64,000 nt of DNA from Vitrella brassicaformis CCMP3155 (GCA_001179505.1 CDMY01000624.1:247519-311518); one strand, 5' to 3'. Counted from the stretch's first letter, positions 417 through 22,702 are shown. The notes: generated by a model not told the origin, from the sequence alone. Translations and numbers: made by a program.

Positions 417-2606
417 ATGTTGTCTGGTCGTCCCGACACCGACATGGCCTCCCCTGCTATGGCGGACGGTGGCGATGGCGATGAAGGTACACTCCACTCA
501 GACAGATGCAGCACATCACACACACAGCATCATCGCCAAGCGTCGTGTGTGTGCATGTGTGTGTTCTGTGTTCCTTTGCAGATCATGTAGCCGTGGAGGA
601 ACGGCGTGACGGCAGCGCACAGCCAGACGGACCAGATCGCAATGGTGGCGATAGTGGTGGGTAACAAAATAATGCAACACACACGAGCCCCCGCCGTCGG
701 TCGCTATCCTCTTTGTGTGCATGGGTGCAGGTAGAGGTGTTGGCAGTGTTGGTGGGCATCAGCGCAGCGGAGAGAACCGGAGCCGACATAACGGAAGTAG
801 GTAAACACCCACAGACACACAAATCAGAATCGCCCCTCATTCATCATTGCTAATCTGTCTGTCCGCCTTGCGATCCACAGATCCGCCGTTACCCCTTGGC
901 TGGAAGAGCTTGGAGAACGGGGTGATCGACGTCGACTTCCCTCGTGGCACCAGTGACGCCAGCAGACGCTTGTCCGAGGCCGTCATTCGCCGCACAATCA
1001 CTGACGAACAGCAGATGACGCAGCTGATTCAGCAGAATGGAGCCGACCTCAATGTGGAGCCACGGCTGTGGGTGGCGGGCACCAGGTTCGGCTATGTAGC
1101 TTATCCGCTGCTGTCGCTGTGCATCTTTAACCTCACTGACAACAGCGTGCCGTCCATCTGGGCAGCCGACGTTGGCGGTGCTGGCACTCCCGTTGCCATG
1201 CCGAAGTGGCAGACCCGCGGCCTCCAACTCGCCATCATGCGGGCTCTCATCGAAGGCGGTGCCGACATCAATGGTGGGGGTCCACGCAGACCCATCCGAG
1301 TGGCCATCGCCTCGTGTAACCGGGAGGCATTTGGGCTCCTGATGAGTCAGCCAGGTACACACGCATTCACGGCACTCACGACACGGAACACACACCATGA
1401 TGTCTGTCTGTCTGTCTGCCTGTTCCAGGCATCCAGCTGCCGGGGCTCTGCGTGATGGAGCTGCCGATCCCGTTGCCGACGGATCAGCCGACTGAGGAGA
1501 GCGAGGCCATCCTGCTGTCCTTCTACCAGCTGCTCATCCAGCGGGACAGCAGCCTCGCGACCGAGCGGCGCCCGAATTGCATGAATCCGCTGCATGCGGC
1601 CATGACGCCTCCCGTCTGCTCCCAGCAGTTCATCGACAGCTACATCGACATGCTGGTGGCCGACGGGGCGGACATCAGGGCCGTGCACAACAATGGGTGG
1701 ACGCCATTACACGTCGCGGCCTGTCAGGGTTCCCACTGTGTCGCTGCGTCTCTGTGCCGGCGTCTCACCGCTGCCGACATCAACAGAGGGAGGCCGACTG
1801 ACCTGCACCCCCTCACACCCCTCACCGTCGCTGCCGTGCGGCTCGATTTAGTCGCCCAGCAGCTGCAGAACGACAACACGGGGCGGGCCGTGAGGGACCG
1901 GGCCAGCATCCGGATCCCCAACCTCAAGACCACCATGCGTGTGCTCCTCCAGGCGGGCGCTGACATCGCTCTCATGCCCACAGCCACAGAGCATGACCGC
2001 CGCCGTCGCCAGCTTGTGCTGCCCGAGTATGCGACAGTGCTCAACAATCTGCCGGATGACGTCATGGCTGCCGTCAACGCCGCCCTCGCCCCTCAGCGGT
2101 CACTCGCGGCCTTGCTCGGCCCCCGGCTGGCCGTCGGCCCGCAGGAGGCCCCCATCTTCGCCTGGCGCCTCGCATCGTACCTCTTCGACATGGCGGCCGC
2201 CACCCAGACCATCACTGAGGCCATCGGCTTGCGGCACTCCGCCATGGCCCGGCGTGTGCGTGCGGCTGTCGAGCACTTCGTTTGGTCGGGAGTGTACGAG
2301 GCCAGCAGCAACAGGGAGGTGGTGGGCGGAATGGCCGATGTGGGCGGCGAGATGGTGCGGATGCCGCTGCAGTGCTTCGCCATCAATGCGGGATAGCAGG
2401 ACGGACAACATCGGCTGCTGGGTGTGCGTGAGGTGGTGCACAGGGCCCGGCTGGACGAGGCGTCCCAGCATGGCGTGGCGGGGCTGGTCAAGGGCTTCAA
2501 CGAGCACCTGGGGGATGACGACTGCCAGTTCCAGTGGCAGCAGCTGGGGTGGGTCGAGAGGGGCCGGGACGGCAGAGCGACCTTCAGACCGCTGCAGCTG
2601 ACGTGA
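417..2606 (+). CDS. Ankyrin-repeat protein, array copy A1 (type-I C-terminus); in-frame TAG at 2394-2396 removes the last ~70 aa
   Basis: First exon MLSGRPDTDMAS at 417; module exon ~881-1354, intron 1355-1428, large exon from 1429. Ankyrin motifs GADINGGGPRRPIRVAI and GADIRAVHNNGWTPLHVAACQG. Copy A2 has CAG at the TAG position and the frame continues to TGA 2606. The small 5' exons are not fully resolved. Confidence 0.8.
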
Positions 2607-3397
2607 GATAAGCGAGCGGGGCACGTCGATTGGTCGATGGATGGATGGATGAGGGGAAGACAGTCAGGCGGGCGGGCAGGTTTTGATGTGCGCATGAATA
2701 GATTGGTGTCGCTGCCTCACCTGGTCCTGCTTGTCGTGCGTGGATGGAAGGATGGATCGATGAGAGGCAGGCCAGCAGATGGACAGGCACCGGTCGGTGT
2801 GAGTCACTCATGATGTGTTCGCTCAGTGGCACTCATCCAGTCGGGCGTCACTGACGTGAATTTGTTGTGGATGGCTCACCCGCTGTCTGCCTGCCTGCCG
2901 GTGAATAGCTGTATACGAGTGAATTCACGTGTTGGTGCAGCTGGTGTCTGTGTGCCGTGACTGACTTACTGAGTGACTGACTGACAAGCATGTGATCGAT
3001 GAACCCTTCGATGTCTCGATTGGTGGTGGTCCACACACACGAAACAGAAACTAGAAAGCCACTATACACCCACTCAAAACACCCACCTCTACGAGAAGGG
3101 CTGGTTGATAAAATGGCGGGAGAGACTGCTGTGCCGCCGCTTGATGTGATGTGATGTGATGTGATGTGATGTGTGGATAAGGGAGTTAGTGGTCGGTCGA
3201 TCACGCCGCTCCGTTTGACCATATTCATTCATATCTGTCTGTCTGTCACGCCACTGCATTGATAAACCAGTCAATAGATAAACACACATGACATGCAAGG
3301 TAAGGTCTCAGCTACACAGCCACACGCTGTCATATTGCCGGCCTCATCCATCTGCTCGCTACGCAAAATGAGTAACAGATGCAGATGCACACTTGCC

Positions 3398-3697
3398 NNN
3401 NNNNNNNNNNNNNNNNNNNNNNNNNNNNNNNNNNNNNNNNNNNNNNNNNNNNNNNNNNNNNNNNNNNNNNNNNNNNNNNNNNNNNNNNNNNNNNNNNNNN
3501 NNNNNNNNNNNNNNNNNNNNNNNNNNNNNNNNNNNNNNNNNNNNNNNNNNNNNNNNNNNNNNNNNNNNNNNNNNNNNNNNNNNNNNNNNNNNNNNNNNNN
3601 NNNNNNNNNNNNNNNNNNNNNNNNNNNNNNNNNNNNNNNNNNNNNNNNNNNNNNNNNNNNNNNNNNNNNNNNNNNNNNNNNNNNNNNNNNNNNNNNN
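3398..3697. other. Scaffold gap (300 N)
   Basis: Run of exactly 300 N. Confidence 1.
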
Positions 3698-4465
3698 CGG
3701 CTCGATTTAGTCGCCCAGCAGCTGCAGAACGACAACACGGGGCGGGCCGTGAGGGACCGGGCCAGCATCCGGATCCCCAACCTCAAGACCACCATGCGTG
3801 TGCTCCTCCAGGCGGGCGCTGACATCGCTCTCATGCCCACAGCCACAGAGCATGACCGCCGCCGTCGCCAGCTTGTGCTGCCCGAGTATGCGACAGTGCT
3901 CAACAATCTGCCGGATGACGTCATGGCTGCCGTCAACGCCGCCCTCGCCCCTCAGCGGTCACTCGCGGCCTTGCTCGGCCCCCGGCTGGCCGTCGGCCCG
4001 CAGGAGGCCCCCATCTTCGCCTGGCGCCTCGCATCGTACCTCTTCGACATGGCGGCTGCCACCCAGACCATCACTGAGGCCATCGGCTTGCCGCACTCCG
4101 CTATGGCCCGGCGTGTGCGTGCGGCTGTCGAGCATTTCGTCCGCTCGGCAGTGTACGAGGCCAGCAGCAACAGGGGGGTGGTGGGCGGGATGGCCGATGT
4201 GGGCGGCGAGATGGTGCGGGTGCCGCTGCAGTGCTTTGCCATCAATGCGGCGCAGCAGGGCGGGCAGCACCGGCTGCTGGGTGTGCGTGAGGTGGTGCAC
4301 AGGGCCCGGCTGGACGAGGCGGCGCAGCATGGCGTGGCGGGGCTGGTCAAGGGCTTCAACGAGCACCTGGGCGATGACGACTGCCACTTCCAGTGGCAGC
4401 AGCTGGGGTGCGTCGAGAGGGGCCGGGACGGCAGAGCGACCTTCAGACAGCTGCAGCTGACGTGA
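3698..4465 (+). CDS. Ankyrin-family copy A2, 3' part only (5' end lost in the gap), type-I C-terminus intact
   Basis: Aligns to A1 from 1839 (offset 1859); open to TGA 4465, ending WQQLGCVERGRDGRATFRQLQLT. Confidence 0.8.
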   Translation, partial: RLDLVAQQLQNDNTGRAVRDRASIRIPNLKTTMRVLLQAGADIALMPTATEHDRRRRQLVLPEYATVLNNLPDDVMAAVNAALAPQRSLAALLGPRLAVGPQEAPIFAWRLASYLFDMAAATQTITEAIGLPHSAMARRVRAAVEHFVRSAVYEASSNRGVVGGMADVGGEMVRVPLQCFAINAAQQGGQHRLLGVREVVHRARLDEAAQHGVAGLVKGFNEHLGDDDCHFQWQQLGCVERGRDGRATFRQLQLT

Positions 4466-5171
4466 GATGGGCGGGCGAGGCACGTCGATTGGTTGATGGA
4501 TGGATGGATGAGGGGAAGACAGTCAGGCGGGCGGGCAGGTTTTGATGTGCGCATGAATAGATTGGTGTCGCTGCCTCACCTGGTCCTGCTTGTCGTGCGT
4601 GGATGCAAGGACGGAGAATTGGGAGGCAGGCCAGCAGATGGACAGGTACCTATCAGTCGGTGTGAGTCACTCTCATGATGTGTTCACTCAGTGGCACTCA
4701 TCTAGTCGGCGTCACTGACGTGAATGGGGTGATGGAGGGCTCATCTGCTGCCAGCCTGCCAATGCGCGAAAGTTGTGAGGGACGAATTCACATGTTCGTG
4801 TTGCTGTATGTGTCTGTGCGGCGACTTAATGGCTGAATGACACTGCATTTAATCGATGACAGCTTCGATGGTCCCGATTGGTGAGCATAGCAGACACACA
4901 CTATGAGATATCTTGAAAAAGCAAAAAAGAAAACCCTCTCAAACGCCTCGACACTCATACACAGAACACCATAATATCTGGCCGCAGCGCATCAGTGGAA
5001 AATCGCCGTGACCTAGTCTACAACTATTGTGCACCACAGCACAGCACAGGACAGCACAGAGAGGCGCAGTGGGCTCACGGACATGCACACGCAGCCGAAT
5101 CATGACACATCCAGAGCACAGACACGCACGTGGGTCTCCCTCCTCTGCCCCCTCCCGTCAACACATGTCTG

Positions 5172-5988
5172 TCAGGTGTGTGGGTCGAATGCATGTTGGT
5201 AGACGGGCCCCGAGAGCTTTGCATCACATTGGTTGCGGCAGATGGGGCACAGCAGCCTCCCGCCGTCGTGCTCCTTGAGCTCCTCGAAACAACCTGCAAC
5301 ACACAGCCACACACACACAGACATCGATGATGGTGATGCTGTGGTGTGGCTCCTGTCCCTCCCGCCTGCCCAGCGTACCGTTGCAGAGGCACAGGTGTCT
5401 GCAGGGCATCAGGACCACCTCAAGGGGAGCGTCGTAACACACCACACACGTCGACATGATGCCCTTCTCCCTGCGCCTCTTATTGCTCTCCTCCTCTGCT
5501 TTAGCATGTTCGGCTCGCTCCTCATCAAGGTGCTTCTCCATGGCCTCGATGACGGCCGCCGTCAGCTCTTCCTGCCGGCCCAGCTGGGAAGCCGCCATAG
5601 CCAGCTGGCTTTGCACGTCTTCCAACTCAACTCGCAGCAGCCGAAGGTCGCCCTCCATCTGTTGCTCACTCAGCCACTTAACCGCCACCTCCAAAGTGCT
5701 CATGTGGCCAATGCGGCAGTCCTTCAGAGTGCGGCCGTCTTTGAGTTCAAACCAGCGGTAGGCGGGCCGCAGCAGCAGCTTGACTTGGTGGCGAGGGAGG
5801 CCCTCGTTGTCGCGGATCTTGGCTTTGACCTTCTCGATGGTGTCGGTCGGGTTGACATCGACCACACGGGTTTTGTCTGCGGTAAGGCACACACACACAG
5901 GGGGGAGGGAGGCGGTGAGTGCGTCCGGTTGTGTGTCTGTGTTTTGCTCACCAGAAGTGTCGTAGATGTCCTTGTAGAGAATCTGCAT
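5172..5988 (-). CDS. Ubiquitin-like domain + coiled coil + RING-HC protein (putative E3 ligase), 3 exons
   Basis: Exons 5988-5952, 5876-5379 and 5293-5172, GT-AG and in frame. N-terminus MQILYK...DTIEKVKAKIRDNEGLP...LKDGRTLKDCRI matches the ubiquitin fold. The spliced C-terminus CVVCYDAPLEVVLMPCRHLCLCNGCFEELKEHDGGRLLCPICR is a complete C3HC4 RING. Confidence 0.88.
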
Positions 5989-6169
5989 GCCTGGCCGCAG
6001 ACAGATGAGTCTCTTTCGAATGCGAAGACCTGAAGACCTGTCTTGCTGTCTGTCTATCTGTCCATTCTGTCTTCACTTTTCTGCTCTTTCGTTGTCTCTT
6101 TGTCTTCTTTGAGCTCGCCTCTCCGGCGATGGTCCTCGCTCTTTTGGGCCCAGGACAGAGATCTTCGCA
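5989..6169. promoter_or_regulatory. Putative bidirectional promoter between divergent UBL-RING and ANK-RING genes
   Basis: 181 bp between divergent ATGs (5988 minus, 6170 plus); inferred from position only. Confidence 0.45.
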
Positions 6170-9100
6170 ATGGGCAATGAGCAGTCATCTCAGCATGGAG
6201 GGACGAGTGACCTGGCGGTGGGTCGGTCGGGCACCTCGCGGAATGACTTGAGGGGCGCAGAGGGAGACGCTGCGGCACCTGTCACAAGGTGAGAATCAAA
6301 GAGAATAAAAGCATGTACATCGGCCACATGGGATTGACTGTTGCATGTTTTGCTTGTGCTGATGCTGTTCGGTAGCGTGACGACGGAGACTGTGGATGAC
6401 ACGCTACTTGATGACACGGGTGAGAAGTGCCGTCCCGTGTCGGCCTCGACAAGCATATGGAAACTGGCACACGTGCAAGGTGACAGACTGCACACTCCGC
6501 ACCACGCAGGTCCACACCCATTGCATGTTGTGGGTGCGCGTGTCAATTGGTTCCGCGTCGTGTCAGGTGAGCATTCCAACAGGGTGTTGTTCTCGGAGTG
6601 TCTGAGTGAGTACACGGACCCCGTGGAGCCATCCCCTGAACACAATGGGCGAATCATACTCGCTAGGGACACGTAAGTGTTGACCCGAGGATATATCCCC
6701 CCACTCACTGGCAGATAGGGGGCGGCGAGGCTCATGTTGGGTGGTGCGCGTGTGTCGTTGTTTGAACTTGAAAAGTATGATAGCGTATCACTTTCAAGCG
6801 GGGATGTTTCGCGTCGTCCCTGTCGTTGGCATCTTCTACTCAAAGATCAAGCTCCGCGCAGATACCAAGGTGAATCGACTGACTGACTGAATGACAGGCT
6901 CACCCTAACAGAGGAGCGCACACACGTTTGGGATTTGCTTCTGTTTGTATGTCTGTGTGTCAGTTTACTGATTTCCAGCTGGTTTTGGGTCCCGATGTGG
7001 GTGTGATATCCGAGAGCCTACCCCCTCTGCATTGGGTCGCTGGGGCCGACGAGCAGGGCAACCTTCACGTCATGGCATTCAATGACAGAACAGCAGACGA
7101 CAGCAAAGCGGTGAGCCGCCATGACAAGAACACCTGGAAGGCTTCGCCTTTCTACTTCCTTCCTAGAACCCTTACTCATTCACCATTCCGGCCCTAGACG
7201 ACCCTGCCATGCGGGTAAGAGGCACCTCGGGTCGATCACGTCACGCGCAACCTGCCGCCTGCATTCTTTTGTACGTGTAGGTTGTGTGGCCCGAGCCACG
7301 TACGCCTGAGGGCGGCTCGCGCACACTGGTCGTATTGCATCGGGACCAGATGGTGCTGTGGAACTTCCCCGACCTGATCCGCGAGGCCACGTCAGGCAAG
7401 TTCGACAGCACCAACGATGCGGTGCTGACAGCCGCTGCAGTATCGGGGCTCAAAAAGCGGTACTGCAAGAAAATACAGCTCAAGGACCTGTTCAGGACCA
7501 CACCCACCATGGTGAAAGAGGGGAGGTGGGAATCAGTCAATGCAGTGAATACGTGAATCCATGAGTGTGTCAATGGCTACGCGTTTACAGGCGCCGGGTG
7601 GCCGCAGCCAGACTGTCGACGGCCTATGCAGCAAATCATCAGGTCAGCGAGTGGGTCACTCACTGTACACGAAAACAGGCAGAGCAATTGACTAATGATG
7701 GTGTTTGTCTGCGGATTCGTCGGCTTCAGGTGTTCCTGAAGTTGCCGACTTGTGTTTCTCGCGTGACGGGCAAGTGCTCTTCGCCGCCATCAAACCCAAC
7801 CACATCGTTGCTTGGCTCGTGTCGGTAGGCGGCACATGTGTGGATGGGTATAGATGGCCCCACACTGTCCAACGTCTACCATGCCTGGTTGTCTTTGCCT
7901 CCTTTTCCCCACCAGTGTCCCGAGAAAGGCGCTCCTCAGGCAGAGGACCTGTTTTCCCATGCGCTTTCCTCCGACCTGGACAGCCCCACTATCGCATCCA
8001 TCAACACCTTCACACCCCCCATGCTCACGGACATATCCCTGGCTCACCACCAGTCCGCACCACCTCCGCCAGAGTACCTGGTGGTCGGCAGTGGCAGCAA
8101 CATGAGCGTGCAGTTTTACCGCACCAGCAGAGACCAACACCGCCCCCTCACTCTAGAGCAGACGATGCGCCTCATGTGCGTGGGGGGTGTAGGGCTGGAT
8201 GGCCCGGCACGAGTGCGGGTGGCGCATGGCCAGGGTGCGGGCAGCGCCTTTGTGGTGGTGGGTGTGCCGGTGAGAGAGGCGGATGGCGGGCTGGTGCAGA
8301 GGTTCGTCCTCATCGAAACCAGGGAGTGGACCGCACAGAGACCATTTCTGCCCGCAAAGGCTGTCAGACAGGTGAGTGAGGCGGTGCGAACAGAGCATGA
8401 CAAGCCCCACAGGCACACGGATCTGCTATGCTGTTTTTCCTGCTGGTCAGCTGCCGATGTCTCATTCATGTGTGGATTGGGCGTGCGGGATGCCACGTGA
8501 GCACGACTCAGTCAAGGTGGAGCAAGGGCGCAGCCTCATCATCTACTGCTTCGAACGGATGTCACCAGCTGACAGGACTACCAGGAAACAGGCAGAACTA
8601 AACCTACACCATCAGGTTAGCCGACGTGAGCAGGATGTCATGTAGACGCATCACCGACTCACCGTTTGTCCTTCTTCTGTCTGCTCAGTCGCTGAGTCAG
8701 CTGCGGTCTCCTTCGCCGGGCCTGCCCGACACCACCTCCCACGTGCAGCTCTTCACACCAGCCGAGCAGGCGCCACCGTTGTCGCCCAGAGCAGAAGAGC
8801 CCGATGCAGAGGAGACTATGGGAGGTGAGGCCGTGGAGAGAACGGTGGGGAAAAAGGAGGCATCCACTACTATCCAGCCACCGCCAGGATTCCAGCCATC
8901 CTTCCCCGATACCCCCGCATCCTCCCCTGCAGGTGCGCAGTTACCACACGGCTGGATCAGCTGTGGGAATGGCGTCACCTTTCCTGCTGGCACCAGTGAC
9001 GCCAGCAGACGGCTGTCCGAGGCCATCATTCGCCGCACCATCGCTGGCGAACAGCATATGACGCAGCTCATCCAGCGGTATGGAACCGACCCCAATGTGG

Positions 9101-12100
9101 AGCCACTGCTGCGGCTGGCGGGCACTACGGGTCGCTATGTAGCTTATCCGCTGCTGTCGCTGTGCATTGACAACCTACGTGACAACCTCACTCACAATAG
9201 CGTGCCGTCCATCTGGGGAGCCGTCGGCGAGGGCGAGTGTCCCGTCGCCATGCCGACGTGGGAGACGCCCTCCCTGCAGCTCGCCGTCATGCGAAGCCTG
9301 ATCGAGAGAGGGGCGGACATCAACAGGGGTGCGGGAGTGGCTAGACCCATCCGAGTGGCCATCGCCTCGTGCAACCAGACCGCCTTCGATCTCCTGATGG
9401 GCCGGCCAGGTGCGCACCAATTCACAGCACTCACGACACGGAACACACACCATGATGTTCGTCGGGACGTCTGTCTGTCTGCCTGTCTGTCTGTCTGTCT
9501 GTTCCAGGCATCCAGCTGCGGGGGCTTTGGGTGATCCATCTGCCTTTCACGTTGCCGACGGACCAGCCGACTGAGGCTCACGAGCGCACCCTGCTGTCCT
9601 TCTACCGGCAGCTCATCCAGCGGGACAGCACACTCGCAACCGAGCGGGGCCCGAATGGCACCAACCTGGTGCATGTGGCGGCCTTGAGCCATTCCGTCTG
9701 GTCCCAGCAGTTCATCGAGAACTACATCGACCTGCTGGTGACCAACGGGGTGGACATAAAGGCAGTGGACATCGGTGAGCGGACGCCATTGCACTACGCG
9801 GCAGGCTGCGGCTGTCACTGTGTGGCTGCCTCTCTCTGCCGCCGTCTCACCGCTGCCGACATCAACAGAGGGGTGCCAAATGACCCCACCCTCACGCTCC
9901 TCACCTACGCTGCCCGACAGCTCGATGAGGTCACCCAACAGCTGCGAGATGACACCACGGAGCAGCCCGTGAGGGACCAGGCCACCGTTCGAATCCCCAA
10001 GCTCCAGAAGACCGTCCGTGTGCTGCTCCAGGCGGGCGCCGACATCGCCCTCATGCCCACAGCCAGAGAGGAGGACCGCCGCCGTCACCAGCTGGTGCTG
10101 GCTGAGCGCATGGCGGCGGCCAATGAGCTGCCCATTCCCGAGCCGCACCCGGCCACCATCGAGGCGCAGGGGCGGCTGCAGAAGATGAAGGAGCACCGCG
10201 ACAAGCGCAAGGGCCGGCAGGCCACACGAGAGGCCAACGAGGCCCCCACAGCGGCCGAATTGGCGCGGCAGCAGAGGGAGGCCGACGCCCTCATCAGAGA
10301 GGAGGAGGCCAACAAGAAGGAGGCGGCGGCTAAGGCGAAGGCGGGCAAGAAGGGTAAGGGCAAGCGGGGCAAGGGGCAGCACAGCGCAACTTCCACCCCC
10401 ACCGCCGCCGGCAGCCGCCAGGGCGGCGAAGACGACCGGGCGGACAGCACTGGGGCAGCCGATGACGACGACCAGCCAGATCCCAACGATGAGGATAGCG
10501 ACGCCCTGCTGCTTGCGTCGGCCTTCGCCCAACGCGCCATCGAAAGCCGTAAGCAGGCCAACAACCCCAAGCAGCCCAAAGGATCGACTCATCCCCCCTT
10601 CTTGCCCTTCCAGCACCCCACAGCCAAGCAACAGGCCACCCTGCCACCCTCAGCCGATAAGTCCCGATCCCACCGGCCCCACAATCGCCCTCTGCTCTCT
10701 CGCCCCAGCGGTGTGTCGACGGCCGACCAGACGCCAGGCGAGGAGCGGCTGGCGGGCCCATCGGCAGACAGCAAGTTGGGAAGAGGCAGCGGGTTTGGCC
10801 TCTCGGCTGCTGCACCATCCCTGTTGTCTCGGGCGGCCGCTCCCCCTCCCCATCTGCCGTCAGCTGTGGAGCTGCGCGACTCGGGCAAGCGCCGACCGTT
10901 TGTGTCGTCGAGTCCCACTCACCCGCCCCCACCGCGTCGGCCCCTGCCACCTGCACACAGACCGGCGAGCGGTGCCGATGAGTCAGTCCCGCCTCCAGCG
11001 CATGCGCCACAGCAGCCGTAAGCGGACAGACACAGAGAAGGGGATAGATGGGTGGGCACAGTGAATGGTGTTGGTGTGTGTTGTCGTCTCTCTTTGTGTC
11101 AGTGACGACTTGCTTCCCTCCTCGTCGACTGGGCATCGTCCGTCGTGTCACCGGGGCCCTCCGCCACTCGTCAAGTGCCCCAAGTAAGGAACAGACAGGC
11201 CGACACAAGGACGCTCCAGGCACACACCGGTGGGGGGTTATCGTGCATGTGTCTTCTCAGGTCGTCTGGGGCTTCGTTGAGCCACGATGATGCCTGTCGG
11301 TCGCCATTGTTTGAGCTGAGGTGCGCATACACGCGCCGCACAGCCGCCATTGAATTGCCATGTTTGTTCTGTCTTGTGTCAGGTCCGCGGCTGACGCCTG
11401 TCCGTCGTCCAGTAGCTACGACGATTCCAGTGCTGCACCAGCAGCCCCGGCAGCCGCAGCAGCAGCCGCATTCGGAACACCATCAGCACCATACGAAGCA
11501 CCACTAGGGTAGGCAGGCACACCAACACACACACACGCACCACAGAGGCGGCTCGTCACGTCATTGGCTTGCGTGTGTGTGGTCAGGCCATCGCACTACC
11601 ATGAGGACCGACAGGGCGCCTCGGCGTCGGCACACCATGGTGCTGCAGCTGCTGCCCCTGCTGTAGACGACATTGTGCGGCAGCGAGACGAACTCGCCCG
11701 GCAGCTCGAAGAGACTCAACGAAGGTACGCTGGGATGCTCGCTCACCTCTGCAGCACAGACACACACACACGCGATATGATGCGATTGATGCACACAGGC
11801 TTGCCGAGCTCACCACAACCGCCCAGCAGCACCAGCCGTCATCGTCCGGCAGCTCCAGTGCCCCTCTGTCGCCTCAGCAAACACGGCCACAGCAGCCGCA
11901 GCCACCTGCCGGCACTGGTGCTGACAGCACACAGGCCGGCGGGTGCATCATCTGTTTCGGCGAGCACGGCCCTGCCTCCATCATGTACGTGCCCTGCAGA
12001 CACATGCACATCTGCCACAAGTGCTACGCCCACCGCAGGGACGCCTGGCACCACAGCCTCCCCCGCCTCAAGGCCGACAATGCCCGTCGGGCGGAGGAGA

Positions 12101-12240
12101 ACAAGGCACGGATCAAGCGGGACCAGGAGCCGCTGGAGCTGCGGCCGGAGGGCTACCTGTGCGAGCAGTGCCAGACGGAGGTCGTCTTTGCCGGGTCGAT
12201 GGACGAAGTGCTGCGGTGGATCGGCCAGCCATTCACATGA
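6170..12240 (+). CDS. Large spliced gene (~1510-1550 aa): N-myristoylation motif, unique beta-propeller-like region, ankyrin module (A3), coiled coil, low-complexity linker, RING-HC
   Basis: In-frame GT-AG chain: 6170-6288, 6376-6479, 6567-6672, 6776-6869, 6964-7110, 7281-7511, 7591-7642, 7730-7824, 7916-8371, 8451-8615, 8689-9409 (probable extra intron 8825-8932), 9508-11017, 11103-11183, 11261-11320, 11383-11508, 11587-11724, 11799-12240. Starts MGNEQSS; WD40-like VADLCFSRDGQVLFAAIKPNHIVAW; ankyrin GVDIKAVDIGERTPLHYAAGCG; RING CIIC...PCRHMHICHKC...CEQC. The propeller call is weak. Confidence 0.7.
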
Positions 12241-12449
12241 CTGACTGACTGACTGACTGACAGCCAAAGATGCCCGTCAGTCAGTCAGACGGCGACAGAG
12301 ACTGACTGCATCGGCGATGGGGAGAGAGCGGCGGGAGGGTGTCAATGACTCTGACTGACAGGTAGATGCATGACATGAGTGGGCTGACACAATTCATTGG
12401 CTGGGCTGCATTGAGATAGATGAGCTTCATACGAACGAACATGAGTGTC

Positions 12450-13105: not shown

Positions 13106-16100
13106 ATGTCGTCTGATCGTCCCGACACCGACATGGCCTCCCCTGCTATGGCGGACGGTGACGATGACGGTGCAGGTGCAACCAGAGCCAAGACGCCGTG
13201 TGTATGTCATCGTGTGATTGCAGACGGTGAAGGGGAGGAGGAGGACCATGGCGGCGCCGGGCACATAGAGGGAGACAATCGCAATGGCGCTGACCGTGGT
13301 CAGTGACCGCACCAAACACAACAGCAGCACGTTCACCTGCTCGGCTGTGTGTGCGTTTGCTGTGTGTGTGCGTGTGTGTAGGTGATGGTGGAGGCGTTAG
13401 CGGTGTGTGTCGGGGTCTCAATGTTAGTGCTGGTGGCGCCAGTTGGCAGCAGGGCAGCGGGCAGAGCCAGGGGCCACAAAGCGGAGGTAAACAATCGCCG
13501 ACACACAAATTGTTAATGAGCCCGTCTATCTGTCTGTCTGTCTGTCCGCTGTGCCGCCCACAGGTCCGCCGCTACCATCTGGTTGGAAGAGCTCCGAGAA
13601 GGAGGTGGTCGTCGTCCGCCTCCCCCCTGGCACCAGTGACGCCAGCAGACGGTTGTCCATGGCCATCATTCGCCGCACCATCACCGACGCACAGCAGGTG
13701 ACCCAGCTCATCGAGCAGAATGGAGCCGACCCCAATGTGGAGCCACGGCTGCGGGTGGCGGGCAGCACGGGTCGCTATTCCGCTTATCCGCTGTTGTCGC
13801 TAGCGATTGACGGCATGACCACGAACAGCGTGCCGTCCATCTGGGCAGGCAACGGCGACGTCGATGATGGCACTCCCGTCGTTTTGCCCATGTGGGAGAC
13901 GCCCGGCCTCAAACTCGCCGTCATGAAGGCCCTCATTGAAAGCGGCGCCGACATCAACACGAGGCGTAGACCCATCCGAGTGGCCATCGCCTCGTGTAAC
14001 CGGGAGGCATTTGGGCTCCTGATGGGCCAGCCAGGTGCACCCCCATTCACACCACTCGCGACACGTAACACACACCATGATGGACGTTCGTCTGTCTGAC
14101 TGTCTGTCTGTCTGGCTGTCTGTCTGTTCCAGGCATCCAGCTGCGGGGGCTCCGCGTGATGGAGCTGCCCGTCACACTGCCGACGGATCAGCCGACTGAG
14201 GAGAGTGAGGCCACCCTGCTGTCCTTCTACCAGCTGCTCATCCAGCGGGACAGCACACTCGCAGCCGAGCGGTCACCAAATGGCGGCAATCCAATGCATT
14301 GGGCGGCCATGACGCCTCCGGTTTGGTCCCAGCAGTTCATCGAGAACTACATCGACCTGCTGGTGGCCAACGGGGCGGACATCAGGGCCGTGGACAACGA
14401 TGGAGTGACGCCATTGCACTACGCGGCCTTTCATGGTTCCCACTGTGTCGCTACGTCTCTCTGCCGCCGTCTCACCGCTGCTGACACCCAGACACCCCTT
14501 GCCGTTGCCACCATACAGCTCGATGAGGTCACCCAACAGCTGCAGGACGACACCACGGGGCAGGCCGTGAGGGACCAGGCCAGCATCCGGATCCCCAACC
14601 TCAAGACCACCATCCGTGTGCTGCTCCAGGCGGGCGCTGACATCGCCATCATCCCCACAGCCACAGAGGAGGACCGCCGTCGTCAGCAGCTGGTGTTGGT
14701 GGAGCGCACGGCAGCGCCCAACGAGCTGCCCATTCCCGAGCCGCGCCCCGCTACAGAAGCAGCGCAAGAGCGGCTGCAAAAGATGAAGGAGCACCGCGAC
14801 AAGCGCAAGGGCCGGCAGGCCACACGAGAGGCCAACGAGGCCCCTACAGCGGCCGACTTGGCGCGGCAGCAGAGGGAAGCCGACGCCAAGATGGCGGCCC
14901 TCATCAGAGAGGAGGAGGCGGCAAAGAAGAATAAGGAGGCAGGCAAGAAGGGTAAGGATGACGATGCAGGTGCAACCAGAGCCAAGACGCCGTGTGTATG
15001 TCATCGTGTGATTGCAGACGGTGAAGGGGAGGAGGAGGACCATGGCGGCGCCGGGCACATAGAGGGAGACAATCGCAATGGCGCTGACCGTGGTCAGTGA
15101 CCGCACCAAACACAACAGCAGCACGTTCACCTGCTCGGCTGTGTGTGCGTGTGTGTAGGTGATGGTGGAGGCGTTAGCGGTGTGTGTCGGGGTCTCAATG
15201 TTAGTGCTGGTGGTGCCAGTTGGCAGCAGGGCAGCGGGCAGAGCCAGGGGCCACAAAGCGGAGGTACACAATCGCCGGCACACAAATCGTTGACAATCTT
15301 CTCTCTCTCTGTCCGTCCGCTGTGCCGCCCACAGGTCCGCCGCTACCATCTGGTTGGAAGAGCTCCGAGAAGGAGGTGGTCGTCGTCCGCCTCCCCCCTG
15401 GCACCAGTGACGCCAGCAGACGGTTGTCCGAGGCCATCATCAGCCGCACCATCACTGACGTACAGCAGATGACCCAGCTGATTCAGCAGCATGGAACCGA
15501 CCCAAATGTGGAGCCACAGCTGCGGGTGGCGGGCAGCACGGGCGGCTATGCAGCTTATCCGCTTCTGTCGCTGTGCATCGACAATCTCACGGACAACGGT
15601 GTGCCGTCTATATGGGCAGACGTCGGCGATGGCCAGTGTCCCGTCGCCATGCCCACGTGGGAGACGCCCGGACTCCAGCTCGCCGTCATGCGAATCCTAA
15701 TCCAGAGAGGGGCGGACATCAACAGGGGTGCGGGAGTGGCTAGACCCATCCGAGTGGCCATCGCCTCGTGTAACCGGGCCGCCTTCGACCTTCTGATGGG
15801 TCAGCCAGGTACACACCCATTCACAGCACTTACCACACCTGACACAAACCATGATGTTCGTCGGAACGCCTGTTTGTCTGTCTGTCTGTTCCAGGCATCC
15901 AGCTGCGGGGCCGATTGGTGATGCAGCTGCCGTTCACACTGCCGACCGACCAGCCGACTGAGGCGCACGAGGCCATCCTCCTGTCCTTCTACCGGCAGCT
16001 CATCCAGCGGGACAGCACACTCGCAACCGAGCGAGACGCCGATGACACCAATCCGCTGCATGGTGCGGCCATGACGCCTCCCGTCAGGTCCCAGCAGTTC

Positions 16101-18782
16101 ATCGAGAAGTACATCGGCCTGCTGGTGACCAACGGGGTGGACATAGCGGCAGTGGACATTGATGGGTGGACGCCATTGCATCTCGCGGCCTTTCATGGTT
16201 CCCACTGTGTGGCTGCGTCTCTCTGCCGCCGCCGTCTCACCGCTGCTGACATCAACAGGGGGCTGCCAAATGAACCCACCCAGACATCCCTTACCCTCGC
16301 TGCCGTGCGGCTCGATGGCGACACCCAACAGCTGCAGGACAACACCACGGGGCAGGCCGTGAGGGACCAGGCCAGCATCCGGATCCCCAACCTCAAGACC
16401 ACCATCCGTGTGCTGCTCCAGGCGGGCGCTGACATCGCCCTCATGCCCACAGCCACAGAGCGAGACCGCCGTCGTCACAAACTGGTGCTGGTGGAGCGCA
16501 CGGCGCTGCCCAACGAGCTGCCCATTCCCGAGCCGCGCCCCGCCACCATCGAGGCGCAGGAGCGGCTGCAGAAGCTGAAGGAGCACCGCGACAAGCGCAA
16601 GGGCCGGCAGGCCACACGACAGGCCAACGAGGCCCCCACAGCGGCCGAGTTGGCGCGGCAGCAGAGGGAAGCCGACGCCAAGATGGCGGCCCTCATCAGA
16701 GAGGAGGCGGCCAACAAGAAGGAGGAGGCGGCTAAGGCGAAGGCGGGCAAGAAGGGTAAGGGCAAGCGGGGCAAGGGGCAGCACAGCGCAACACCCGCCG
16801 CCGGCAGTCCGCCGGGTGGCGAAGACGACCAAGCGGATAGCACTGGGGCAGCGGATGACGACCAGCCAGCTTCCAACGATGAGGACATCGACGCCCTCCT
16901 GTTGGGGTCAGCCTTCGCCCAACGCGCCGTCGAAAGCCATGCGCAGGCCATCAACCAGCACAAGGCGGCCCCCACCAAGACCCAGCCAGCTGCCCACCCC
17001 AAAGGATCGACTCATCCCCCCTTCTCGCCCTCTCCGCCCCCCACAGCCAAGCAACAGGCCACCCTGCGGCCTTCAGCCGATAAGTCTCGATCCCACCAGC
17101 CCCACGATCGCCCTCTGCTCTCTCGCCCCAGCGGTGTGTCGATGGCCCACCAGACGCCGGGCGAGGAGCGGCTGATGGGCCCATCGGCAGGCAGCAAGTT
17201 GGACAGAGGCAGCGGGCTGGGCCTCTCTGGTGCTGCATCATCCCTGTCGTCTCGGCCGGCCCCTCCCCCTCCCCGTCTGCCGTCAGCTGTGGAGCTGTGC
17301 CAGTCGGGCAAGCGGCGACCGTTTGTGTCGTCGAGTCCCTCTCACCCGCCCCCACCCTCTCGGCCCCTGCCACCTGCACACAGACCGGCGAGCGGTGCCG
17401 ATGGGTCATTTCCCCCTCCAGCGCATGCGCCACAGCAGCCGTAAGGAGACAGACACAGAGAAGGGGGTGGATTGGAGGGCACAATGAATGGCGTTGGTGC
17501 GTGTTGTCGTCTCTCTTTGTATCAGTGACGACTTGCTTCCCTCCTCGTCGAGTGTGGATCGTCCGTCGCGTCACCGGGGTCCTCCGCCACTCGTCAAGTG
17601 TCCCAAGTAGGGAACAGCCAGGCCGACATCAGGACACCTCACGCACACATCGGTGGGTGGTTATCGTGCATGTGTCTTCTCAGGTCGTCTGGAGCTTCGT
17701 TGAGCCACGATGACGCCCGTCCGTCGCCATTGTTTGAGCTGAGGTGCGCACACACGACCAACACACGCCACATAGGTTCCTCCGAACCTCCATGTTTGTG
17801 CTGTATTGTGTCAGGTCCGCGGCTGATGCATTTCCGTCCTCCAGTAGCTACAACGGTTCCAGTGCTGCACCACCAGCTCCAGCAGCAGCCGCATTCGCGG
17901 CACCATACCAGAACCCACTAGGGTAGGCAGGCACACCAACACACACACCACGCCCCACACACCGGCGATGGTGTGTGGTCAGGCCATTGGATGATGATGA
18001 GGGTGGACAGGGAGCCTCGGCTGCGGCTGCTGGTGGTGTGAATGATAGGTGGGTGGCACACATACATGGACATTGACGCACCCATGGGACGGATACCATT
18101 CCGATGCCTTACCGTGTCTTCGTGTGTGTGTGTGTGTGTGCAGTGTGCGAGTGTCGTCACGAGAGGCTGAGCTGCAGCGGCAGAGGGACGAACTCGCCAG
18201 GCAGCTCGAAGAGACCCAACGAAGGTACGCTGGGATGCTCGCTCCCCTCTGCAGCTCACACACACACACACACACACGTGTTATGATGCGATTGATGCAC
18301 ACAGGCTTGCCGAGCTCACCACCACCTCCTTTCAGCAGCACAAGCCGTCATCGTCCGGCAGCTCGAGTGCCCCACCACCGCTACAGCAGCCCCCCCAGCA
18401 GCAGCAGCAGCATCAGCAGCAGCAGCCACTGGCAGCGGCCCAGCCAGAGGGAGATGGGCGTGAGTGTGCCATCTGCCTCGACGCGCCCCCATCGGTCATG
18501 TACATGCCCTGCAGACACCTGCGGCTGTGTCGCCACTGCTATGACCACCGCTGCAGCAAGTGGCGGCGGGACCTCCAGCAGGTGCGGGCCGAGAATGCGC
18601 GGCGGCGTGAGGAGAACGAGGGCATCAAGAGACTGAACGAGGGCCGCAAGAAGGAGAAGAAGATACCACTGGTGGAGCTGCTGGACGAGCCGAAGTACCT
18701 GTGTGAGCAGTGCAAGACCAAGGTGGTGTTCGCCGGGTCGCGCGATGAGGTGCGGCAGTGGGCCGATCAGCCCATCACATGA
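13106..18782 (+). CDS. Tandem-fused double ankyrin cassette (A4+A5) with C-terminal RING-HC; predicted 1543 aa, 15 exons
   Basis: In-frame chain: 13106-13175, 13224-13298, 13382-13486, 13564-14034, 14133-14969, 15018-15092, 15159-15263, 15335-15808, 15895-17440, 17526-17606, 17684-17743, 17815-17922, 17983-18048, 18144-18224, 18305-18782 (4632 nt). RING CAICLDAPPSVMYMPCRHLRLCRHC...CEQC. Could instead be two transcripts. Confidence 0.7.
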
Positions 18783-19139
18783 CATTCCTGCCCGCCTGCC
18801 AACAGACATAGATGTGGGAGATGGCGGGAGGGAGGGGTGGCCTGACTGTGTGATGAATGTTCATTCACGTCTGTCTTCTGATGGCATGCACTGCATGAGT
18901 GGATCCGATCGTCGCTCCCCCTTGTCCCCCTCCCTCCCTCACTCCCTCCCCATCACATCCATGCATACCACACGTGTCAGCATGACATTGACATCGACAC
19001 AGCCAGGCCAGCATGACATTGGTTGGTATCGATACGAGGGAGGCCCACATACATACCAACACGGCAGAGGGGGTTGGGAGGGAGGGATGCCGCGTAGCCA
19101 GGCGGCCGGCAGCCAATAACTATGCCTGCCTCTTGTCAC

Positions 19140-19794
19140 TGGATGGATGGATGGATGGATAGGAGGCAGGCCAGCAGATGGACAGGTATACCTATCAGTC
19201 AGTGTGAGTCACTCTCATGATGTGTTCACTCAGTGGCACCCATCCAGTCGAGGGTCACCGACGTGAATGCGGTGATGGAGGGCTCACCTGCTGACACACA
19301 GACACATGGGGATCCAAGCGACCTGATCTCTCACCATGAGCAATTCATCCAAAGTGAGCGGGGCTCACTGCGGCCGGATGGTTGGCTCCTGACGAGTCCT
19401 GTGGGCCTACCGAAGGGCTCCTTTGCACTCCTTCGTCGACCTTTCAGCCGATCGATGCGAGCCGGAGAGAGGGAGAGAAGGGGACGACAGAATCGTCGCA
19501 CGTAGCGGCTTCTTGTCCAACGGTGAGTGGCAAGATGCGGCGATTGGATCACTCACAAGCGCGCTGACGACCTGTTTGCTGTCTGTGTGTGTTGGCGGTC
19601 TTCAGGTCTGCCTTGTCGACGGGCGGACTGGTTGATTGACTGAGTGTGTGTGTGCGGCTGGCTGTCACCTCATACCTTTGATAGGCAAGCACTGGTTGAT
19701 GCACACACAAATGCATCAGATGCCTGCAGGCCCTTATCTGTCTGTGTTTATGGTCTATGGTGCAGCTCTCTGTCTGTCCGAGTGAGTGAGAGCG
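19140..19794. repeat. Type-I 3' flank remnant (19140-19270) joined to upstream block copy 3
   Basis: GGCAGGCCAGCAGATGGACAGG...GAGTCACTCTCATGATGTGTTCACTCAGTGGCAC matches ~4625-4700 and ~2765-2835, then runs into the shared upstream block. Confidence 0.8.
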
Positions 19795-22702
19795 ATGTCT
19801 GGTCGTCCCGACACCGACATGGCCTCCGCTGGCCCGGCCGACGGTGGCGATGGCGATGAAGGTACACTCAACTCAGACAAATGCAGCACGTCACACACGC
19901 AGCATCATTGCCAAAGGTCGTGTGTGTGTCTGTGTCCGCTTCACCGTCTTTGCAGAGTATGCCGAGCAGCGTGGCGGCGGTGACGAGCGGCGGCCAATGG
20001 ATGTCCAGGAGGGCCAGGAGGGCCGTGCGGGCGATGGTGCGGTGGGCCATGTCGTCATGAGGCAGAGGAACAACGCCTCCACGACAGAGCCCTATCAGAT
20101 GCCATCGCCGGTACCCCAACAAACAAGAGCACCGCGACAGACAGACAGACACCTCCACGCACTCTCTCGTACGTGTGTGTGTGTGTGTCATCGGCTGTCC
20201 CGGCAAATGGCAGGACATTCATCTCACGGCCAGCGTGGCGGATGGGCCACAAGCAGCATCGGCAGCAGCATCGGCAGCAGGGGTGCAGGAACCCTCATCT
20301 AGCTATACAGGTAGTCAATGAATGCACCACAGCCAGCCTGACGCACCACGTCGTCATTGCCTGGGTCGTGTGTGTGTGAATGTGTGTGAAGGTGTAGCTG
20401 TAGGTGTTGTGAAGCGTGTCGGCTCTCCTCTGGAGCGTGAGGAGCATAAGAGGGCCAAGGGAGACGGCCAGACGCACCAACCTGCCGCCAAGGTGCCAAA
20501 TGCCCAGCAGCCACAGGTGATTGCATGCCTCCTCTGCTCCTCAGCCAGCACCAGCACACGATGATGGCATGGCTGTGTTGTGTTGTGTATGGTGGTGCAG
20601 CGTCCCCCCGCTCCCCATCCTGCTGCTGCTGGTGTTGGTGTCCTTCCATCCGCTAGTCCGACGCTGGGCGGCCATGCGCATCGCCCACCGCAACCGCCCC
20701 GCGTCGGAGGGGGCGTGAGCAGCACTGCTGGTGGGGATCTCGGTGTTGGTGCTGGTGCTGGTGAGGGTGCCTCTGATGGGCAGCAGGGCCGACAGAACGG
20801 AGGTCGGTGAACGAATCACCCACCACCAACACACACATATAGCACCCTCCCCTGTGGATGCTGTGCCACCCACAGGTGCACCGTTACCCCACGGCTGGAA
20901 GAGCTCGGAGAACGGCGTCGACGTCCGCTTCCGTCGTGGCACCAGCAACGCCAGCAGACGGCTGTCCGAGGCCATCATTCGCCGCACAATCACTGACGAA
21001 CAGCAGATGACCCAGCTGATTCAGCAGAATGGAGCCGACCTCAATGTGGAGCCACGGCTGCGGGTGAAGGGGACCACGGGCGGCTATGCAGCTTATCCGC
21101 TGCTGGCATTGTGCATTGACAACCTCACGGACAACGGCGTGCCGTCCATCTGGGCAGGCGACGGCGATGACGAGTGTCCCGTCGCCATGCCGCTGTGGGA
21201 GACGCCCTCCCTGCAGCTCGCCGTCATGCGGCTGTCATCGAAAGCGGTGCCGACATCAACGCGGGTGAGGGGGACCATACGCCCATCTTGGTGGCCATCG
21301 CCTCGTGCGACCGGGCCGCCTTCGACCTCCTGATGGGCCAGCCAGGTGCGCACCCATTCACAGCACTCACGACACGGAACACACACCATGATGGACGTTC
21401 GTCTGTCTGTCTGCTCCAGGCATCCAGCTGCAGGAGGTGATGGACCTGCCGCTCCCATTGCCGACGGACCAGCCGACTGAGGAGAGCGAGGCCATCCTGC
21501 TGTCCTTCTACCAGCTGCTCATCCAGCGGGACAGCAGCCTCGCAACCGAGCGGTCACCAAACGGCGGCAATCCGCTGCATTGGGCGGCGATGGTGCCTCC
21601 CATCTGGTCCCAGCAGTTCATCGAGAACTACATCGACCTGCTGGTGGTCAACGGGGTGGACATTGCCGCCGTGGACGACAATGGACGGACGCCATTGCAC
21701 TTCGCGGCCATCAGCGGTTCCCACTGTGTCGCTGCCTCTCTCTGCCGCCGTCTCACCGCTGCCGACATCAACAGAGGGCTGCCGAACCTCCCCACCTACA
21801 CAGCCCTCACCCGCGCTGCCCGACAGCTCGATGGCAACACACAGCGGCTGCAGGACAATGACACAGTGCCGGCCGTGAGGGACCGGGCCACGAGACGGAT
21901 CACTCACCTCCAGACCACCATCCGTGTGCTGCTCCAGGCGGGCGCTGACATCGCCCTCATGCCCACAGCCACAGAGGAGGACCACCGTCGTCGCCAGCTG
22001 GTGCTGCCCGAGTACACGACACTTCTCAATCAGCTGCCACAGGCCGTTATGACGGCCGTCAACGCCGCCCTGCGACCCCAGCGCGAGATGGCCGACGCGC
22101 TGACAGAGGCACTCCACAATGCCACCGCCCAGCAGCTCAAGGCCGCCTTCCCCTCCTTCGACCCGTCCCGCCCCTCGGTGCCTCCTCCCCCCTTCCCCCC
22201 ACACGTCGACCCGGAGCCCTCCTGGCAAGACGACTACATGCCCTTCGCCAACAAGGACATGTCAGCCATCGCCTGGCGCGTGGCGTCGTCCTTTGTCAAC
22301 CCATCGGTGCTGCAGCAGAGCCCCCGCCCCGTCCAGAACGTGACTGAGGTCGGCCGCCGCGTCAACGCTGCGATGGCGCGGTTCGTGGAGGCCGCCGCAT
22401 CGCTGCAGGTGGTGGGCAATGAGGAGGTGGTGGGCGGGACGACCAATGTGGGCGGCGACAGGGTGCGGGTGCCGCAGCTGCAGTGCTTTGCCGTCAGGTG
22501 GCAGCATAGCGGGCAGCACCGGCTGATGGAGTTGCGTGAGGTGGTGCAGCGGGCCATCCTGGACGAGGCCGCCAGATACGACGGGCTACCGGCCAGCATC
22601 GACAACGGCTTCACCAAGGACGTGGCGGCGTTCGAGTGGCAGCAGCTGGGGTACGTCGACGAACGAGGGCAGTGGGTGACACTCGGCATGCAGTCAGTGT
22701 GA
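19795..22702 (+). pseudogene. Ankyrin-family copy A6 (type-I-like C-terminus) with a 1-nt frameshift at ~21230
   Basis: Starts MSGRPDTDMAS; module exon from 20876. ATGCG-GCTGTCATCGAA lacks one G relative to A1 (ATGCGGGCTCTCATCGAA), giving TGA at 21333. The downstream exon to 22702 is intact with ankyrin repeats (GVDIAAVDDNGRTPLHFAAISG). A sequencing error cannot be excluded. Confidence 0.65.

What the first reader, a model, noticed from the sequence alone, without database searches (positions are those of the whole stretch)
417..22702. A recombining array of modular ankyrin genes with swappable N-termini at one shared phase-1 splice acceptor
Six related copies (A1-A6) share a two-exon core (PLPxGWxS...ANK). 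In the copies with a visible 5' end, the core starts at a homologous acceptor (~881, 8933, 13564, 15335, 20876) and is fed by different upstream exons. The junction is phase 1 in A3-A6; for A1 the upstream donor phase is unresolved. The upstream parts are short Gly/Asp-rich exons (A1, A4), a longer low-complexity set (A6), a ~600-aa unique domain (A3) or a whole preceding ANK gene (A5). This is the signature of exon shuffling. The array also shows intact, truncated, frameshifted and fused members. Inference: a fast-diversifying, lineage-specific family of substrate-binding/E3 proteins, like expanded recognition families in immunity or host interaction.
Basis: partly seen in the sequence, partly recalled or inferred. 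Interest (0 to 1): 0.75.

Follow-up and report, generated by a model that had tools for sequence, protein, structure and literature searches.

The report
Recombining ankyrin gene array in Vitrella
Six neighbouring copies of an ankyrin-repeat gene private to the alga Vitrella brassicaformis are being reshuffled by ordinary DNA recombination (gene conversion, one in-frame fusion, one young chimeric gene); the splice site they share is inherited, not a docking point for foreign exons.

Summary
Six paralogous ankyrin copies lie at 417-22702, and the core exon starts at 881, 8933, 13564, 15335 and 20876 behind a conserved pyrimidine tract plus CAG.

- The phase-1 acceptor is kept in all 25 closest copies genome-wide, so it is shared by descent.
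- In A1, A4, A5 and A6 the exon feeding it is homologous, and A1, A4 and A6 share the same first exon.
- They differ by a short or a long internal cassette that encodes a disordered N-terminus.
- Cassette type disagrees with the phylogeny of the ankyrin body (AU p=5e-12), and identity between copies is mosaic. Recombination between paralogs is therefore real.

A3 is a young chimera. A 2.8-kb copy of a WD40-like gene, whose parent lies on another contig, is joined at a CAG microhomology to the first base of the core exon. In the parent that point is mid-exon, and the frame reads straight through, so this is not intron-mediated exon shuffling.

A4 is fused in frame to A5. A6 has a 1-nt frameshift. 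A1 has an in-frame TAG. A2's "truncation" is only the assembly gap. Only A3 and A5 carry a RING.

The scan met this family (150 or more genes) before on other DNA (s1-197196).

The parts
417..2606 (+). A1, short-N-type ankyrin gene (database model P0013, 587 aa). Exons: 444-485, 581-658, 733-796, 881-1354 (core, phase 1-1), 1429-2372, 2445-2603. There is an in-frame TAG at 2394-2396, which the model skips with a 72-nt 'intron'.
   Evidence: Exact mapping of P0013. The TAG is CAG in A2. Ank Pfam hits.
3398..3697 (.). Assembly gap lying inside a near-identical repeat. It hides the 5' half of A2.
   Evidence: the first 300 nt after the gap are 100% identical to A1 1839-2140, and the left flank is unique.
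3698..4465 (+). A2, the 3' part of a recent copy of A1 (dS 0.054). Its C-terminal domain is intact to the stop, with no TAG.
6154..8932 (+). A3 N-terminal block: a copy of the promoter-proximal 2.8 kb of a WD40-like gene whose parent lies on G000:C800 (12 exons, start MGNEQ at 6170).
   Evidence: 92% identity to C800 over 2818 bp, ending at 8932. Exons 95.6% and introns 92.9% identical, dN/dS 0.38, dS 0.086, no stops. WD40-like by language-model features only.
8930..8932 (+). A3 joint. This CAG is shared by both parents. Homology to C800 ends here and homology to the ankyrin core begins here. The frame is open across it (ORF 8626-9534).
   Evidence: In C800 the frame runs on as coding for ~140 more codons.
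8933..12240 (+). A3 ankyrin body, low-complexity tail and C-terminal RING-HC with a ~45-aa insert (last exon 11800-12237). The whole gene is database model P0104, 1519 aa, 20 exons, 6170-12237.
   Evidence: 83.7% identity to A5 over 2.7 kb.
13106..14955 (+). A4, short-N-type copy. First exon from 13106; e2-like exon ~13223-13300; e3-like exon ending at 13486; core from 13564; ankyrin exon cut off at 14955 inside its Lys-rich tail.
14955..14956 (+). A4-A5 joint. The A4 ankyrin exon is joined in frame to the last ~10 nt of a first exon, which still has its GT donor.
   Evidence: Three-way alignment. ORF 14156-15100 reads through. Behind the joint, identity to A4's 5' region is 98-100%.
14956..18782 (+). 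A5. It has no first exon of its own. e2-like exon 15011-15097; e3-like exon ending at 15263; core from 15335; ankyrin exon plus tail 15915-17441; intact RING-HC last exon ending at 18782.
19795..22702 (+). A6, long-N-type copy (database model P0106, 767 aa). Exons: 19795-19860, 19955-20110, 20214-20312, 20394-20516, 20601-20802, core from 20876. A 1-nt deletion in a G run at ~21236 shifts the frame.
   Evidence: The same long cassette occurs in paralogs P0001, P0008 and P0019.
797..880 (+). Intron before the core exon in A1. Its homologues are 13487-13563, 15264-15334 and 20803-20875. They are 71-84 nt long, (CTGT)n-rich in short-type copies, and end in a conserved ...GCC.CCCACAG.

Best explanation
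This is a tandem cluster of a large ankyrin-repeat family private to Vitrella brassicaformis. It evolves by birth-and-death plus recombination between paralogs.

The ancestral gene of this ~25-copy subfamily already had three parts:
- a first exon, short exons for a disordered acidic/Gly-rich N-terminus, and a phase-1 intron;
- a folded ankyrin body that starts exactly at the core exon;
- one of two tails, either a conserved ~250-aa domain or a low-complexity tail ending in a RING.

The shared acceptor is therefore shared by descent (shown).

The first-exon region and the body flank the N-terminal cassette and are homologous in all copies. Gene conversion or crossing-over can therefore exchange the short and long cassettes and patches of the body. 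The discordance and the mosaicism are shown; the mechanism is inferred.

Illegitimate, microhomology-level joins have also made two new architectures here:
- A3: the 5' 2.8 kb of a WD40-like gene is joined to an ankyrin-RING copy at a CAG, in frame and exon to exon.
- A4-A5: an ankyrin exon is joined in frame to the end of the next unit's first exon.

Other copies carry single lesions (the A1 TAG and the A6 frameshift). A2's state is hidden by the gap.

Function is inferred only: ankyrin solenoids that bind partners. In A3 and A5 the solenoid is coupled to a RING, so those two are plausibly substrate adaptors with their own E3 domain.
For: - Organism and family: ~79 Vitrella proteins match, with only generic ankyrin hits outside Vitrella. 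There are at least 153 genomic matches to the core exon.
- Acceptor: kept in 25/25 closest copies. The NCBI-type models of A1 and A6 use it in phase 1.
- Upstream exons: homologous. The tally is ~13 short, 7 long and 5 without a first exon.
- Structure: in the AlphaFold model, residues 1-80 are disordered and the fold begins at the core exon. PDB matches are ankyrin solenoids only.
- Recombination:
  - A4 and A5 are 98-100% identical over ~500 nt, then 62-75%.
  - Run test, global p<0.0005.
  - A3-A5 dS is 0.34, 0.27, 0.13 and 0.65 along the gene.
  - A3's RING exon is 75% identical to a copy on C431 but 56% to A5's.
  - Monophyly of the long-cassette copies is rejected, p-AU 5e-12.
- A3 chimera.
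- A4-A5 joint.
- Lesions.
Against: - No transcript evidence was available for any junction.
- The database model of A3 splices oddly around the joint (exons 8689-8823, 8895-8930, 8995-9411). If RNA supports that model, the simple read-through is wrong.
- The core-exon tree alone is a star, and its AU test is only p=0.066.
- Recombination inside the longer alignment violates the single-tree assumption of the AU test.
- The A6 frameshift lies in a G run and could be a sequencing error.
- The A4-A5 joint rests on one assembly.
Confidence: 0.75

Rival explanations
1. Classical exon shuffling. The core is a mobile module, and unrelated 5' exons are brought to one phase-1 acceptor by recombination within introns.
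For: - The core exon is symmetric: phase 1 at both ends, 881-1354, 474 nt.
- One unrelated N-terminus, A3, ends exactly at the exon's first base.
- Cassette type reassorts relative to the body.
Against: - Four of five copies are fed by homologous exons, and 20 of 25 subfamily copies share the same first exon.
- In A3's parent gene the joint is mid-exon, and the frame reads through.
- The A3 database model does not use the acceptor.
- Only one foreign partner was found among 25 copies.
Confidence: 0.08
2. Ordinary decaying tandem duplication. Most or all of these copies are pseudogenes, and the 'fusions' are deletions with no function.
For: - A1 has an in-frame TAG and A6 a frameshift; A4 is truncated and A5 lacks a first exon.
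- Pairwise dN/dS is 0.3-0.8, and pN/pS is 0.73 over 23 copies.
- No close MMETSP transcript was found.
Against: - Long frames are kept open: A3 has 1519 codons over 20 exons, and A5's body, tail and RING are open.
- Splice signals are kept in 25/25 copies.
- Scaffold windows have pN/pS of 0.2-0.3, while only loop patches are high.
- The A3 N-domain has dN/dS 0.38 with no stops in either copy.
- Both joints are in frame.
Confidence: 0.12
3. Assembly artefact. The apparent truncation, fusion and frameshift come from mis-assembly of near-identical repeats.
For: - A2's truncation is certainly the gap.
- A sister array on C278 has two gaps in the same place of the repeat, and these faked a 1560-aa open frame.
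- 32801-33225 is an exact inverted copy of the contig end, next to the second gap.
- The A6 lesion is a G-run length change.
Against: - The A4-A5 and A3 joints lie between non-homologous sequences, so a repeat-driven misjoin is unlikely.
- Both joints are in frame.
- A3's two halves have diverged from their parents (92% and ~84%), so they are not chimeric reads of existing loci.
Confidence: 0.05

Closest known systems
Tandem multigene families evolving by birth-and-death with gene conversion and unequal crossing-over (for example plant NLR clusters and other expanded recognition families)
   Same: - Tandem copies 77-92% identical with mosaic identity tracts.
- A mix of intact, truncated, fused and frameshifted members.
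- A conserved scaffold with variable patches.
- Restricted to one lineage.
   Different: - The repeat domain is ankyrin with a private C-terminal domain or a RING.
- No ligand or immune role is known.
- Positive selection was not formally shown here.
Young chimeric (fusion) genes made by DNA-level duplication and illegitimate recombination (jingwei-type examples, from general knowledge)
   Same: - A3 has two identifiable parents.
- It is young (dS 0.086 on the N-terminal side).
- The joint has microhomology.
- The reading frame is preserved.
   Different: - No retroposition is involved: all introns of both parents are retained.
- The joint coincides with an exon's first base on one side and lies mid-exon on the other.
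Ankyrin-containing E3 ligases and substrate receptors (HACE1, FEM1 family)
   Same: - An ankyrin solenoid precedes a ubiquitin-ligase-related element.
- These proteins are among the structural matches.
   Different: - The matches are to the ankyrin fold only.
- A3 and A5 have a RING-HC with a long insert, not a HECT domain or a Cullin-box.
- A1, A2 and A6 have no ligase domain at all.
Exon shuffling of symmetric phase-1 modules (Patthy's rules, from general knowledge)
   Same: The core exon is phase 1-1, and the folded domain starts at the exon boundary.
   Different: The module is not found in unrelated genes except A3, and that joint is not intronic on the donor side.

Membership tests
Ankyrin-repeat proteins (Pfam Ank/Ank_2/Ank_4) | Sequence match to ankyrin repeat profiles above the curated cut-off | tested here: met
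   Ank_2, Ank and Ank_4 score above cut-off in the second core exon of A1, A3, A4, A5 and A6 and in P0104.
Ankyrin-repeat proteins (Pfam Ank/Ank_2/Ank_4) | Helix-turn-helix solenoid fold | tested here: met
   The AlphaFold model of paralog P0009 has pLDDT 84.7. The best PDB matches are DARPins, AnkB, HACE1 and FEM1. The model is of a paralog, not of a window copy.
RING-HC (C3HC4) E3 ligases | C-x2-C ... C-x-H-x2-C-x2-C ... C-x2-C ligand pattern and profile match | tested here: inconclusive
   All eight ligands are readable in A3 (P0104 1421-1500) and in A5 (18300-18782). The last pair is separated by a ~45-aa insert, and zf-C3HC4_3 scores 20.8 bits against a cut-off of 27. No RING is present in A1, A2 or A6.
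Exon shuffling at a shared intron | The same module joined to unrelated upstream exons in several genes | tested here: not met
   Of 25 copies, 20 have the family's own first exon and one of two family cassettes. Only A3 has a foreign partner.
Exon shuffling at a shared intron | Breakpoints inside introns of matching phase on both sides | tested here: not met
   On the donor side, the A3 joint lies inside a coding exon of the C800 parent.
Exon shuffling at a shared intron | Symmetric module (same phase at both ends) | tested here: met
   Core exon 881-1354 is phase 1 at both ends in P0013. The ankyrin fold, however, continues into the next exon.
Chimeric gene by illegitimate recombination | Two identifiable parents, a sharp joint, and a frame kept open | tested here: met
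   The parents are C800 (92% identity to 8932) and the ankyrin-RING paralogs (from 8930). ORF 8626-9534 spans the joint.
Chimeric gene by illegitimate recombination | Expression of the chimera | not testable with these tools
   No RNA data were available. A database gene model (P0104) joins both halves, but the evidence behind it is unknown.
Gene conversion / concerted evolution in a tandem array | Mosaic identity and phylogenetic discordance along the gene | tested here: met

The most novel reading that the evidence does not exclude
The family is a modular binder repertoire with three kinds of part: disordered N-terminal cassettes, ankyrin bodies, and effector tails (a constant domain or a RING). 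These parts are reassorted preferentially at exon edges, because the short microsatellite-rich introns ((CTGT)n, (CA)n) beside them act as break and recombination hot spots. On this reading, the A3 joint at the exact first base of the core exon is a product of that mechanism rather than a coincidence.
Probability: 0.1. Interest if true: 0.7.

Novelty: new member of a known kind. Interest (0 to 1): 0.38.

Why it matters
It gives a clean, datable example of how a private gene family in a free-living relative of apicomplexan parasites builds new architectures. Two examples lie within 20 kb: a WD40-like + ankyrin + RING chimera with both parents still in the genome, and an in-frame two-body fusion.

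It also corrects a tempting inference. A shared intron phase in paralogs is inheritance, not evidence of exon shuffling.

For annotation:
- The A1 model hides an in-frame stop behind a 72-nt "intron".
- The A6 model patches a frameshift.
- A2 cannot be judged until the gap is closed.

Tried and rejected
- **Multi-body fusions elsewhere.** A "1560-aa open frame" spanning two cores on C278 turned out to run through two N gaps, so I dropped the lead.
- **Core-exon-only tree.** It is a star phylogeny. Cassette labels cluster no better than shuffled labels, and the AU test gives p=0.066. This was inconclusive until the alignment was lengthened.
- **Pfam on the open frames of 6341-8645** gave nothing. 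The WD40-like reading of the A3 N-domain rests only on language-model neighbours.
- **Whole-model fold search** returned only ankyrin hits, so the C-terminal domain remains unidentified.
- **Literature search** for Vitrella plus ankyrin found no description of this family.
- **Spliced models.** I used only single exons by reference and database proteins returned by the tools. In the dN/dS script the two halves of A6's core exon were bridged with NNN at the frameshift.
Full report
**Source and family.** The window is G000:C624:247519-311518 of Vitrella brassicaformis CCMP3155. The sequence is about 60% G+C.

**Observation.**
- Self-blastn finds six related ankyrin units:
  - A1 (~417-3025)
  - A2 (3698-4883, right of the N gap)
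  - A3 (8930-12272)
  - A4 (13157-14957)
  - A5 (14951-18814)
  - A6 (20860-22570)
- They are 77-92% identical over 1.1-2.7 kb.
- Pfam finds ankyrin repeats in the second core exon of every copy.
Each start lies behind a pyrimidine tract and CAG.

**Gap.**
- The 300 nt right of the gap are 100% identical to A1 1839-2140. Identity then falls to 91-98%. The 512 nt left of the gap are unique.
- A1 and A2 differ by dS 0.054.
- The gap therefore lies inside a very recent repeat, and A2's 5' half is unread. Calling A2 truncated is not justified.
- A sister array on contig C278 has gaps at the same place in its repeats.

**Gene models.** Three database proteins are exact models of window genes.
- **P0013 (587 aa) is A1.**
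  - Its exons are 444-485, 581-658, 733-796, 881-1354, 1429-2372 and 2445-2603.
  - The 72-nt "intron" 2373-2444 removes an in-frame TAG (2394-2396). This codon is CAG in A2, and paralog model P0018 ends at the same place.
- **P0106 (767 aa) is A6.**
  - It uses 20802>20876 in phase 1.
  - It works around a 1-nt deletion in a G run at about 21236.
- **P0104 (1519 aa, 20 exons, 6170-12237) is A3**.

**Are the N-termini different?** Mostly they are not.
- The N-termini of the paralog models all start with the same MASPAMADGGDGDE-type first exon. They all end with a GVG..QQGSGQ..G exon just before the core.
- In the window:
  - first-exon homologues lie at 417-485, 13106-13165 and 19798-19860;
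  - the exon before the core lies at 727-796, 13378-13486, 15164-15263 and 20690-20802.
- What differs is the middle. A1, A4 and A5 have one short exon there. A6 has four exons, and paralogs P0001, P0008 and P0019 elsewhere in the genome share that long cassette.
- Among the 25 closest core copies in the genome:
  - all keep the CAG acceptor;
  - about 13 have the short cassette and 7 the long one;
  - 5 lack a first exon: A3, A5, two copies interrupted by gaps and one other.
- The 5' region with the first exon is shared by both types at 78-86% identity, while the cassettes match only their own type.
- An AlphaFold model of the intact paralog P0009 (pLDDT 84.7) shows residues 1-80 as disordered. 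The fold begins at the first residues of the core exon, and PDB matches are ankyrin solenoids only.
- So the shared phase-1 acceptor is inherited, and it marks the border between a disordered leader and the folded body.

**Is the array recombining?** Yes.
- A4 and A5 are 98-100% identical over 13157-13650 / 14951-15420. They are 62-75% identical at 13800-14100, and near 100% again in short tracts further on.
- A run test on polymorphic sites gives a global p<0.0005.
- Between A3 and A5, dS is 0.34 (core exon), 0.27 (ankyrin exon), 0.13 (tail) and 0.65 (RING exon).
- A3's RING exon is 75% identical to a copy on C431 but only 56% identical to A5's.
- On the core exon alone the tree is a star, and the test is inconclusive.
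- On 1337 columns (core exon, intron, ankyrin exon) for 23 copies:
  - A6 (long) groups with A1 and A4 (short);
  - A3 groups with A5;
  - a tree that holds the seven long-cassette copies together is rejected (lnL difference 125.6, p-AU 5e-12).
- Each cassette is homologous within its type, so the discordance needs exchange between paralogs. The flanking homology (first-exon region and body) makes gene conversion the simplest route. That step is inferred.

**A3.**
- Its upstream 2.8 kb (6154-8932) is 92% identical to a locus on contig C800. That homology stops at 8932, and homology to the ankyrin core starts at 8930.
- The three shared bases are CAG.
- In C800 the reading frame runs straight on through this point for about 140 more codons. 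Further coiled-coil-like frames follow, and there is no RING. In the parent the site is therefore mid-exon.
- In A3 the same frame continues into the core (ORF 8626-9534), so no splice is needed.
- The database model instead uses two small introns and a 36-nt exon in another frame, and it skips the conserved PLPxGW motif. Only RNA can decide between the two readings.
- Exons of the two N-domain copies are 95.6% identical and introns 92.9%, with dN/dS 0.38, dS 0.086 and no stops. The chimera is therefore young and has not visibly decayed.
- The N-domain has no Pfam match. Language-model neighbours are WD40 propellers, which is a lead only.

**A4-A5.**
- At 14955|14956 the Lys-rich part of A4's ankyrin exon is joined to the last ~10 nt of a first exon, with its GT donor intact. 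The joint is in frame.
- ORF 14156-15100 reads through it.
- Two origins fit: a deletion between neighbouring genes, or an internal tandem duplication of ~1.8 kb followed by conversion. I could not separate them.

**Selection and function.**
- Pairwise dN/dS is 0.3-0.8.
- Over 23 copies, pN/pS is 0.73. Scaffold windows are at 0.2-0.3, and 8-codon patches reach up to 1.9.
- This is suggestive of a variable surface on a kept scaffold, as an earlier report of this scan says for the same family on other DNA (s1-197196). No formal, recombination-aware test was run here.
- Only A3 and A5 carry a RING-HC. All eight ligands are present, there is a ~45-aa insert, and the Pfam score is below cut-off.
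- That RING exon occurs at 57 or more loci in the genome.

**Literature and limits.**
- No paper describing this family was found.

Noticed in passing
window 32801-33225 and 63576-64000: These 425 nt are an exact inverted copy of each other. One copy abuts the second N gap (33226-33525) and the other is the very end of the contig. This is probably a scaffolding artefact.
   Followed up: no
window 2394-2396: A1 has an in-frame TAG (CAG in A2) followed by 69 open codons in the same frame. The database model hides it in a 72-nt 'intron'. Paralog model P0018, from about 30 kb upstream on the same contig, ends at the same residue.
   Followed up: partly
window 8824-8994: Database model P0104 splices out 8824-8894 and 8931-8994 and reads 8895-8930 in another frame, dropping the conserved PLPxGW motif. 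A plain read-through is open here.
   Followed up: partly
window 11800-12237 and 18300-18782: The last exon encodes a RING-HC with a ~45-aa charged insert before the last Cys pair. It has 57 or more relatives across the genome, many of them not next to an ankyrin core.
   Followed up: partly
window 5224-5988 (-): A separate gene between A2 and A3 encodes a ubiquitin-like domain plus the start of a C3HC4 RING (Pfam ubiquitin 5.6e-10, zf-C3HC4_3 8e-8).
   Followed up: no
window 25499-27387 and 33605-35515: A second, unrelated duplicated segment, 79% identical over 2 kb.
   Followed up: no
window 52389-52841: A direct repeat 99.6% identical, about 248 nt long and offset by 205 nt.
   Followed up: no
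L023 (G000:C278:79000-88900, reverse strand): A sister array of three ankyrin cores has two 300-N gaps at the same place in the repeat. These fake a 1560-aa open frame. Arrays of this family are systematically hard to assemble.
   Followed up: yes
introns before and after the core exon (e.g. 797-880, 1355-1428, 13487-13563): The short introns (71-95 nt) are largely (CTGT)n or (CA)n microsatellites. More distant family members have the whole protein in one open frame of 570-650 aa with no intron at these sites.
   Followed up: no
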